DNA of 63,817 nucleotides, the filler included, from Octopus bimaculoides (Eukaryota), in NCBI RefSeq assembly GCF_001194135.2. It is 7 parts of 6 records of this genome, joined end to end, with 100 filler letters (N's around TTAATTAATTAA, not from the genome) between each part and the next. Parts side by side here need not be neighbours in the genome. Positions count along the whole stretch, not along the records: positions 1 to 31,394 come from NC_068991.1; 6 more parts are not named here. One strand, written 5' to 3'. Below the pieces are notes generated by a model that saw nothing but the letters and a program-made list of their open reading frames with translations, was not told where the DNA came from and did no database searches. Of this stretch, positions 19,635 to 19,815 are shown piece after piece (position 1 is the stretch's first letter; each line of letters opens with the position of its first letter). Position numbers and translations under genes: made by a program.

Positions 19635-19815
19635 TGAAAGACAGAAGATGGAATATACGGAAATTAATTATTAATCACGACAATTGTTTCGACACATCTA
19701 GCATCGATTCCTCTTGGGCGGGACACTCAACAACTGGTTCAGGAGCATCCGGTGATGCAGATGTATCTCGTCGGGTGATAGATAAATACAACTCGTTAAA
19801 AGGACTGTTCCGCAA
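19635..19815 (-). mobile_element. Hammerhead-containing dispersed repeat, copy 2
   Basis: Homologous along its length to 14340-14500 (+) and 39858-40042 (-). Confidence 0.8.
19674..19779 (-). ncRNA. Type I hammerhead ribozyme motif, near-intact (U4C in the core)
   Basis: Minus strand reads ATCAC-CCGACGA-GATACATCTGCATC-[48 nt]-GATGCTAGATGTGTC-GAA-ACAATTGT-C-GTGAT: stem I ATCAC/GTGAT, a 14-bp stem II (one G-U, one bulge), palindromic stem III ACAATTGT, and a GUC cleavage triplet. Confidence 0.75.

What the first reader, a model, noticed from the sequence alone, without database searches (positions are those of the whole stretch)
19674..19779. Near-intact type I hammerhead ribozyme with a long stem II and palindromic stem III
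Seen: the minus strand reads ATCAC CCGACGA GATACATCTGCATC [48 nt] GATGCTAGATGTGTC GAA ACAATTGT C GTGAT. All hammerhead parts are in type I order: stem I ATCAC/GTGAT, the CUGANGA box (U4 is C here, but the 14.4 kb sister copy has CTGACGA), a 14-bp stem II closed by G-C, GAAA, stem III, and a GUC triplet. The predicted cut lies between 19679 and 19678. Established: type I hammerheads with a short palindromic stem III occur in Penelope-like elements and in non-autonomous retrozymes, where they are proposed to cleave as dimers. Inference: this is the remnant of a self-cleaving mobile RNA family. I do not know whether it has been described.
Basis: partly seen in the sequence, partly recalled or inferred. 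Interest (0 to 1): 0.88.

Follow-up and report, generated by a model that had tools for sequence, protein, structure and literature searches.

The report
Decayed hammerhead ribozyme in octopus retroelement
The flagged stretch is a real but mutated copy of a self-cleaving hammerhead RNA motif carried by a short, old, dispersed octopus repeat that looks mobilised by Penelope-like retroelements, which is a known kind of element and not a surprise.

Summary
The motif is at window 19779..19674 (minus strand), exactly as described. It has a 5-bp helix I, the box CCGACGA (U4 replaced by C), a 14-bp helix II with one bulge and a 48-nt insert, GAAA, the palindrome ACAAUUGU, and GUC. The predicted cut falls between 19679 and 19678. 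Shuffled sequence almost never gives such a motif.

It lies in a ~200-nt dispersed repeat. A second window copy (14331-14512) keeps the canonical CUGACGA but has lost 24 nt ending at the predicted cut site. An Octopus vulgaris locus holds two further copies, head to head and 5'-truncated, beside (TA)n/(TG)n repeats. Published work describes that layout for Penelope-like element (PLE) insertions. Each copy carries a different lesion, which suggests neutral decay from a canonical ancestor.

A second, unrelated hammerhead family with the same architecture and the same inverted-pair layout turned up in another O. vulgaris locus. Rfam misses all of these motifs.

Limits: only four copies were reachable, there is no covariation statistic, no PLE reading frame was found next to any copy, and no cleavage assay exists.

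This is a new member of a known kind. This copy is probably inactive.

The parts
19674..19779 (-). Type I hammerhead motif, 106 nt. Helix I 5' strand 19779-19775; box CCGACGA 19774-19768 (C at U4 = 19773); helix II 5' strand 19767-19754; 48-nt insert 19753-19706; helix II 3' strand 19705-19691; G12 A13 A14 19690-19688; helix III ACAATTGT 19687-19680; C17 19679; helix I 3' strand 19678-19674. Predicted cut between 19679 and 19678.
19706..19753 (-). Insert at the tip of helix II. It holds an inner hairpin (GGAUGCUC/GAGUGUCC), of which 5-6 bp are kept in three copies through one-sided changes (U.G to U-A, G.U to A-U).
19630..19829 (-). Repeat unit shared with the other copies: a leader of about 50 nt (..TTTAACGAG..), the hammerhead, and a tail of about 50 nt (..GTATATTCCATCTTCTGTC..) that runs into a TATATAC(ATAC)n(AC)n microsatellite.
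14331..14512 (+). Sister copy of the repeat. ATCAC 14380-14384 and canonical CTGACGA 14385-14391. A 24-nt deletion (junction 14456/14457) removes most of the helix II 3' strand (all but its first three bases, GAT), GAAA, helix III and C17. The sequence resumes at GTGAG, the helix I 3' strand.
19909..20741 (-). Internally deleted mariner-type DNA transposon directly upstream of the repeat. It is not part of the hammerhead element. Inverted repeats at about 19909-19950 and 20702-20741; HTH_48 reading frame 20569-20294; C-terminal transposase remnant in another frame.
19566..19626 (.). (TG)n/(TGTA)n microsatellite abutting the 3' end of the repeat, followed by the assembly gap 18793-19565.

Best explanation
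This is a decayed genomic copy of a short (~200 nt) hammerhead-bearing retroelement sequence of an octopus genome. It is either the 3'-terminal (pLTR) part of a Penelope-like element or a non-autonomous derivative of one, that is, a retrozyme or Sm-alpha-like monomer. Proposed mechanism for the family, all inferred: the element is transcribed; the type I hammerhead has only a 2-bp helix III with a palindromic AAUU loop, so two copies pair through ACAAUUGU to form the active dimer and cut after GUC, trimming the RNA to unit length; a PLE reverse transcriptase/GIY-YIG endonuclease then copies the RNA from its 3' tail into nicked AT-rich or microsatellite DNA. Priming on both target strands would give head-to-head pairs of 5'-truncated copies. 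What is shown is the motif, the repeat family, its presence in two Octopus genomes, the inverted-pair layout and the microsatellite flanks. This particular copy is most likely inert. It has C at core position U4, it stands alone, its lowest-energy fold pairs the core GACGA with UUGUC, and it is 63-77% identical to the other copies.
For: The motif and its rarity in shuffles. The family: nhmmer and alignments find the copies window 14331-14512, L006 7919-8064 (+) and L006 7931-7846 (-), and the covariance model R1 recovers the three that span most of the motif (window 19674-19779, window 14380-14482, L006 7907-8011), with the L006 minus copy far weaker (14.5 bits, E = 1.8). Each copy has a different lesion: U4C here, a 24-nt deletion in the sister, G12A in L006(+), a non-palindromic helix III and GUA in L006(-). 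The majority sequence is a canonical hammerhead apart from position 4, where the two informative copies split C/U. Pairs in register are 84.5% against 24-49% when the partner is slid. The L006 arms both end in the same tail (..CATTAATCAAATA) beside (TA)n/(TG)n, and the sister has (TA)13 about 105 nt upstream. The literature describes inverted 5'-truncated copies and microsatellite targets for PLEs, reverse transcription starting on both target strands, PLE hammerheads with helix I of 4-5 bp, a long helix II, a palindromic helix III, mostly solo copies and low activity, a 2-bp + tetraloop helix III in invertebrates, and retrozymes derived from PLE pLTRs with many dispersed monomers. O. vulgaris has 31 PLE families, with an expansion at JC 0.2. 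A second family in L005, with a canonical CUGAAGA, has the same architecture and the same inverted-pair layout next to (TA)n. Canonical-core hammerheads: 2 found in 143 kb against 0.02 expected.
Against: No RT or GIY-YIG reading frame was found next to any copy. Only four partial copies were available. The single compensatory pair (10.4/11.4 A-U to C-G) is not independent, because L006 7919-7931 is both the plus copy's 5' strand and the reverse complement of the minus copy's 3' strand. The core is no better conserved than the rest of the repeat. Rfam gives no hammerhead hit, although it also misses both canonical-core motifs in L005. [quoted passage not shown] There is no tandem arrangement. 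The hammerhead fold is 5.2 kcal/mol less stable than the lowest-energy fold. No cleavage data exist.
Confidence: 0.75

Rival explanations
1. It is a monomer of a tandem non-LTR retrozyme that spreads through small circular RNAs, rather than the 3' end of an autonomous PLE. The solo copies would be dead-end offspring. This overlaps with the best explanation and differs only in what the parent element is.
For: The two window copies share a 5' boundary about 45-50 nt upstream of helix I, and there is no homology beyond it. This fits a discrete ~200-nt unit within the published 170-400 nt range. Helix III is a 2-bp stem with a tetraloop, as in invertebrate retrozymes. Dispersed monomers are common.
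Against: No tandem copy was seen in the window or in L006. Copy ends do not coincide with the cleavage site. Assembly gaps (18793-19565) could hide neighbouring units.
Confidence: 0.3
2. It is a chance resemblance. An ordinary octopus repeat (a SINE-like retroposon or a foldback/MITE-type element) contains a long hairpin, and short matches to CUGANGA and GAAA happen to flank it.
For: This copy's core has a mismatch. There is no Rfam hit and no statistical covariation. The L006 locus looks like a foldback, with ~80-nt inverted arms.
Against: Shuffles gave 0 of 300 motifs with a comparable helix II. The sister copy independently carries the exact CUGACGA. GAAA, the UH cut site and GUGA recur in the 3' halves. 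The window copies are asymmetric, with a leader unrelated to the reverse complement of the tail, so the family is not a terminal-inverted-repeat element. No tRNA-like part was found. A second, unrelated family has the same architecture.
Confidence: 0.08
3. It is a host-recruited ribozyme that still acts at this locus, for example by processing a transcript.
For: None specific. Exapted hammerheads are known in other animals.
Against: U4 is changed to C. The copy sits between a dead mariner and a microsatellite in repeat-rich DNA with no recognisable exon. The copies decay differently. No ortholog was available for a conservation test.
Confidence: 0.03

Closest known systems
Hammerhead ribozymes in the pLTRs of Penelope-like elements (Cervera & de la Pena 2014, PMC4209133)
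   Same: Type I topology, helix I of 4-5 bp, a helix II longer than usual, the G10.1-C11.1 pair, a palindromic 15.2-16.2/loop 3 that implies dimers, mostly solo dispersed copies, and high sequence divergence. The insertion layout (inverted 5'-truncated copies, AT-rich or microsatellite targets) matches PLEs (PMC8557442, PMC11167929).
   Different: Helix II is far longer: 14 bp plus a 48-nt structured insert, so 77 nt separate the two core boxes, against 7-8 bp in PLE min-hammerheads. [quoted passage not shown] Helix III is present as 2 bp plus a tetraloop. No RT/GIY-YIG reading frame was found beside any copy.
Metazoan non-LTR retrozymes (Cervera & de la Pena 2020, PMC7229834; Li et al. 2026 preprint, 10.64898/2026.07.22.740005)
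   Same: A type I hammerhead with a 2-bp helix III capped by a palindromic tetraloop, a unit of about 200 nt, low GC content, and dispersed monomers related to PLE pLTRs.
   Different: No tandem repeat was seen and no evidence of circular RNA is available. The rest of the unit is attached through a very short helix I. Helix II, not helix I, carries the long arm.
Sm-alpha and related SINE-like hammerhead repeats of Schistosoma (summarised in PMC6155905)
   Same: A short non-autonomous interspersed repeat carrying a type I hammerhead.
   Different: No sequence similarity was tested. Sm-alpha hammerheads have a 4-bp helix II with loop-loop contacts and are active as found. Here helix II is long and the copies are decayed.
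Naiad PLEs with 'half-core' motifs (Craig et al. 2021, PMC8557442)
   Same: They are present in Octopus spp. as old remnants and prefer (TA)n targets. Some have the two hammerhead core halves 35-50 nt apart and so escape standard descriptors.
   Different: Naiads are reported to lack canonical hammerheads. Whether this repeat belongs to a Naiad could not be tested, because no Naiad sequence was available.

Membership tests
Hammerhead ribozyme, type I | 5' core box C3-U4-G5-A6-N7-G8-A9 | tested here: not met
   This copy reads CCGACGA, with C at U4. The sister copy reads CTGACGA, so the family ancestor probably met this feature.
Hammerhead ribozyme, type I | 3' core G12-A13-A14 followed by A15.1, with U16.1-H17 at the cut site | tested here: met
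   GAAA ... UC before GUGAU. GAAA is kept in 2 of 3 copies and UH in 3 of 3.
Hammerhead ribozyme, type I | Three helices around the core with helix I open, plus the G10.1-C11.1 and A15.1-U16.1 pairs | tested here: met
   84.5% of cells pair in register against 24-49% when slid.
Hammerhead ribozyme, type I | Score at or above the Rfam gathering threshold for a hammerhead model | tested here: not met
   There is no hammerhead hit at gathering score or at E <= 10. As a control, Rfam also misses two canonical-core motifs in L005, so the test is insensitive to this architecture.
Hammerhead ribozyme, type I | Compensatory base changes in the helices across family members | tested here: inconclusive
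   Four partial copies were available. They give one compensatory pair, which is not independent, and no shuffle support (266/500).
Hammerhead ribozyme, type I | Mg-dependent self-cleavage after H17 | not testable with these tools
   This needs in vitro transcription and cleavage assays.
PLE-associated hammerhead (pLTR) | Short helix I (4-5 bp), enlarged helix II, palindromic helix III/loop 3 | tested here: met
   Helix I is 5 bp, helix II is 14 bp plus an insert, and helix III is ACAAUUGU.
PLE-associated hammerhead (pLTR) | [quoted passage not shown] | tested here: not met
   A9 is followed directly by G10.1. The second family, in L005, does have an extra U there.
PLE-associated hammerhead (pLTR) | Lies in direct repeats flanking an RT + GIY-YIG reading frame | tested here: inconclusive
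   No such frame was recognised near any copy. All copies are short fragments, and full-length elements could not be retrieved.
PLE-associated hammerhead (pLTR) | PLE insertion signature: inverted 5'-truncated partner copy and an AT-rich or microsatellite target | tested here: met
   L006 7846-8064 is a head-to-head pair beside (TA)n/(TG)n. The window copies abut TA-rich repeats. The signature is as described.
Non-LTR retrozyme | Head-to-tail tandem repeats of about 170-400 bp, one hammerhead per unit | tested here: not met
   There is no tandem array at 19566-20756 and no second motif in the window. The gap 18793-19565 leaves some doubt.
Non-LTR retrozyme | Expressed as small circular RNAs | not testable with these tools
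   No transcriptome data were available.

The most novel reading that the evidence does not exclude
Octopus genomes carry abundant hammerhead families whose helix II is expanded into a 55-77 nt structured arm. Standard descriptors and Rfam miss them. They could be the overlooked ribozymes of PLE lineages reported to lack canonical hammerheads (for example the (TA)n-targeting Naiads). The sister copy's 24-nt deletion, which ends exactly at the predicted cut site, would then be a genomic footprint of cleavage in vivo followed by template switching of the reverse transcriptase.
Probability: 0.15. Interest if true: 0.55.

Novelty: new member of a known kind. Interest (0 to 1): 0.3.

Why it matters
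Hammerheads in Penelope-like elements and retrozymes are well documented across invertebrates, so one more family in octopus does not change the picture. Two points have modest value. First, these octopus motifs have a very long helix II and are invisible to Rfam and to usual descriptors, so hammerhead censuses in cephalopods, and perhaps in PLE clades called hammerhead-free, may undercount them. Second, the inverted pair joined inside helix II and the deletion ending at the cut site are cheap genomic read-outs that could be counted genome-wide. Those counts could test how PLE-type reverse transcription and ribozyme cleavage interact.

Tried and rejected
1. Rfam at gathering score and at E <= 10 gave no hammerhead hit. 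The mir-297 match is only the (TG)n microsatellite.
2. A six-frame chimeric peptide of the repeat, searched against the protein collection to fish out other copies, gave nothing at E <= 10.
3. A search with SINE reading frames, meant to find high-copy handles on octopus DNA, returned only 4 proteins.
4. ENA contigs reached through mariner proteins (L001, L002, L008, L009) are from other species. They share only the mariner and hold no family copies.
5. A metagenome scan for the 3' half of the motif gave 0 matches.
6. Supplementary files of the key papers are not held or do not mention cephalopods.
7. The tRNA-derived SINE idea was dropped because ARAGORN finds no tRNA-like part.
8. The MITE/foldback idea was dropped because the window copies are asymmetric.
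9. Upstream homology between the two window copies does not exceed shuffles.
10. A reading frame in L005 (15284-15499) that I thought might be a PLE RT remnant has no Pfam support, so I make no claim about it.
11. The 905-aa gene in L007 is a C2H2 zinc-finger protein, not a PLE.

Full report
**Observation.** In hammerhead numbering:
- Helix I is 5 bp (AUCAC/GUGAU).
- The 5' box is C3-C4-G5-A6-C7-G8-A9.
- Helix II is 9 + 5 bp with one bulged U and is closed by G10.1-C11.1.
- G12-A13-A14 follow.
- Helix III can form A15.1-U16.1 and C15.2-G16.2 around an AAUU loop. Between two molecules it can form the 8-bp duplex ACAAUUGU (-6.4 kcal/mol).
- C17 is at 19679 and G1.1 at 19678.

My descriptor allowed one core mismatch, helix I of at least 5 bp and helix II of at least 4 bp. 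It finds this site and nothing else in the window. In 300 dinucleotide shuffles it gave 0.047 hits per shuffle, and no shuffle produced a helix II of 9 bp or more. The 106-mer folds at -34 kcal/mol, z = -3.5. Rfam gives no hammerhead match at gathering score or at E <= 10.

**Where the window comes from.**
- The window is repeat-rich and full of assembly gaps and microsatellites.
- A mariner reading frame in the window finds Octopus sinensis proteins.
- SINE-derived reading frames find Octopus vulgaris proteins.
- Several window repeats are 75-91% identical to loci fetched from those two genomes.

The window is from an octopus genome; I could not determine the species. Directly upstream of the motif on the minus strand lies an internally deleted mariner, at about 19909-20741. 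It has inverted repeats, an HTH_48 frame and a C-terminal transposase remnant. Downstream, the repeat runs into (ATAC)n(AC)n and then the gap 18793-19565.

**The motif is part of a dispersed repeat.** nhmmer and alignments define a unit of about 200 nt, window 19829..19630 on the minus strand. The unit has a leader of about 50 nt, the hammerhead, and a tail of about 50 nt.

A second copy lies at 14331-14512 on the plus strand. Homology between the two copies does not extend further upstream. That sister copy has the canonical CTGACGA. It has lost 24 nt, covering most of the helix II 3' strand (all but its first three bases), GAAA, helix III and C17. Its sequence resumes at GTGAG, so the deletion ends at the predicted cleavage site to within one base.

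I could reach 115 kb of O. sinensis and O. vulgaris DNA (loci L003-L007). Of these, one locus holds the family. L006 7846-8064 is a head-to-head pair of 5'-truncated copies whose arms are 77% identical. Both arms end in the same tail..CATTAATCAAATA. The pair lies beside (TA)n/(TG)n. The two arms meet inside helix II.

Pairwise identity among copies is 58-77% (63-77% for this copy), so the family is old. That agrees with the Penelope-like expansion at JC distance 0.2 reported for O. vulgaris. Two further family loci (the sister copy and the L006 inverted pair), beyond the copy that prompted the finding, in 143 kb suggest a family of thousands of copies or more. This is a very rough extrapolation.

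**State of the ribozyme across copies (alignment A3).**

| Copy | Lesion |
|---|---|
| This copy (19779..19674) | U4C |
| Sister (14331-14512) | 24-nt deletion |
| L006 plus copy | G12A and C15.2U |
| L006 minus copy | Non-palindromic helix III (CAGUCG), GUA at the cut site |

The majority sequence is AUCAC CYGACGA GA.. ..GUC GAAA CAAUUG UC GUGAU; apart from position 4 (Y), where the two informative copies split C/U, it is a canonical hammerhead. Different lesions in different copies fit neutral decay after insertion from a canonical source.

In register, 84.5% of cells pair, against 24-49% when the 3' partners are slid by 1-3 columns. With four partial sequences the shuffle control is uninformative (266/500). 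The single compensatory pair (10.4/11.4, A-U to C-G) is not independent. The segment L006 7919-7931 is both the plus copy's 5' strand and the reverse complement of the minus copy's 3' strand. The inner hairpin of the 48-nt insert keeps 5-6 bp in three copies through one-sided changes. Conservation is therefore compatible with a real ribozyme family but is not proven statistically.

**Controls and a second family.** A covariance model built from the four copies (R1) was run with filters off over 180 kb. It strongly recovered three of its four training copies; the short L006 minus copy scored only 14.5 bits (E = 1.8). Its best other match was L005 9082-9167 at 19.7 bits. That site reads GUGCAG CUGAAGA U [long helix II hairpin of about 55 nt] U GAAA CGGUUG UA CUGCAU. 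It has a canonical core, a 6-bp helix I, and a helix III that is self-complementary when G.U pairs are counted.

A canonical-core descriptor finds this site and a 46-nt minimal hammerhead at L005 17992-18037. That is 2 hits in 143 kb, against 0.02 expected from 100 shuffles. The L005 9081-9168 element also sits in a head-to-head inverted pair: the plus copy at 9060-9230 and the minus copy at 8990-8830, 84% identical, with the minus copy's 3' end abutting (TA)n. Rfam at gathering score detected neither L005 motif. Its silence on the candidate therefore says little. Octopus DNA thus contains several hammerhead families, at least two of which have a very long helix II and the same insertion layout.

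**Comparison with the literature.**
- Metazoan type I hammerheads usually have a 1-2 bp helix III capped by a small palindromic loop, and they act as dimers.
- PLE hammerheads have helix I of 4-5 bp, an enlarged helix II and a conserved G10.1-C11.1. They occur mostly as solo, truncated, highly variable copies and cleave poorly in vitro.
- Invertebrate retrozyme hammerheads have a 2-bp helix III with a tetraloop.
- Non-LTR retrozymes are reported to derive from PLE pLTRs and to leave many dispersed monomers.
- PLE insertions often carry an inverted 5'-truncated copy and favour microsatellites.
- A purified PLE protein cuts AT-rich DNA and starts reverse transcription on both strands.

The candidate matches these features. 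[quoted passage not shown] I found no paper describing hammerheads in octopus.

**Mechanism (inferred).** In the parent element the hammerhead would trim transcripts after GUC. It would most likely act as a dimer formed through the palindromic helix III. A PLE enzyme would then copy the RNA from its 3' tail into AT-rich or microsatellite targets. Priming on both strands would yield the inverted pairs. The two cDNAs could anneal at the self-complementary helix II, which would explain the junction seen in L006.

This window copy is probably inert. It has U4C, it has no partner copy, and the hammerhead fold (-28.8 kcal/mol) is less stable than the lowest-energy fold (-34.0 kcal/mol). In the latter, GACGA pairs with UUGUC.

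**Rivals.**
- Retrozyme monomer rather than PLE 3' end: not excluded. The shared 5' boundary favours a discrete unit. No tandem copy was seen.
- Chance motif in an ordinary repeat: unlikely.
- Terminal-inverted-repeat element or foldback: rejected, because the window copies are asymmetric.
- tRNA-derived SINE: no tRNA-like part was found.
- Exapted host ribozyme: no support.

**Verdict.** This is a new member of a known kind, a PLE/retrozyme-type type I hammerhead, with an unusually long helix II. The copy in the window is a decayed remnant. Interest is modest. The main open items are a genome-wide census with covariation statistics, linkage to a full-length element, and cleavage assays.

Noticed in passing
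window 14450-14461 (junction 14456/14457): The sister copy's 24-nt deletion (GCTAGATGTGTCGAAACAATTGTC in this copy's sequence) ends at the predicted hammerhead cleavage site to within one base, and the sequence resumes at the helix I 3' strand. It could be coincidence (roughly a 3% chance). It could also be a footprint of reverse transcription reaching the 5' end of a cleaved RNA and then switching template.
   Followed up: partly
L006 7846-8064 (Octopus vulgaris OX597836.1): This is a head-to-head pair of 5'-truncated copies of the same repeat. The arms are 77% identical and are joined inside helix II, so 7919-7931 serves as the 5' strand of one copy and the complement of the 3' strand of the other. 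The pair lies beside (TA)n/(TG)n, about 1 kb downstream of a RabGAP-TBC gene.
   Followed up: yes
L005 9081-9168 (+), with an inverted partner at 8990-8830 (-): This is a second, unrelated hammerhead family: a canonical CUGAAGA, a 6-bp helix I, a helix II hairpin of about 55 nt, GAAA, a CGGUUG helix III and a GUA cut site. It also forms a head-to-head inverted pair (84% identical) that ends at (TA)n. Rfam does not detect it.
   Followed up: partly
L005 17992-18037 (+): This is a 46-nt minimal hammerhead-like motif (AAUAC CUGAUGA A GGCUG..CAGCC GAAA UG UU GUGUU). It has the extra nucleotide after A9 that is typical of PLE min-hammerheads, and it lies next to an (AAT)n run.
   Followed up: no
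window 19909-20741 (-): This is an internally deleted mariner-type transposon. An HTH_48 frame at 20569-20294 joins directly to the last catalytic-domain part, and the C-terminus is in another frame. Imperfect inverted repeats lie at about 19909-19950 and 20702-20741. Related copies occur in O. sinensis and in two unidentified ENA assemblies (ERZ25067582, ERZ26273219).
   Followed up: partly
window 4118-4905 (+): Reading-frame pieces here resemble a non-LTR (LINE) reverse transcriptase (..RCPLSPS.., ..AYADDVTVV.., ..LERLLFRFL.KGR..). I recognised them by eye only; Pfam gave no hit at E <= 0.01.
   Followed up: partly
window 14655-14976, 15433-15995, 16104-16482, 10017-10178, 29066-29373: These are copies of octopus SINE-like and other repeats, 73-91% identical to O. 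sinensis and O. vulgaris loci. This is the basis for calling the window an octopus genome.
   Followed up: partly
window 19569-19638 (+): A sub-threshold Rfam match to mir-297 (31.6 bits against a gathering score of 90) is just the (TG)n/(TGTA)n microsatellite.
   Followed up: yes
L006 18201-18328 (-): A U4 spliceosomal snRNA gene or pseudogene in O. vulgaris (69.8 bits, above the gathering score).
   Followed up: no
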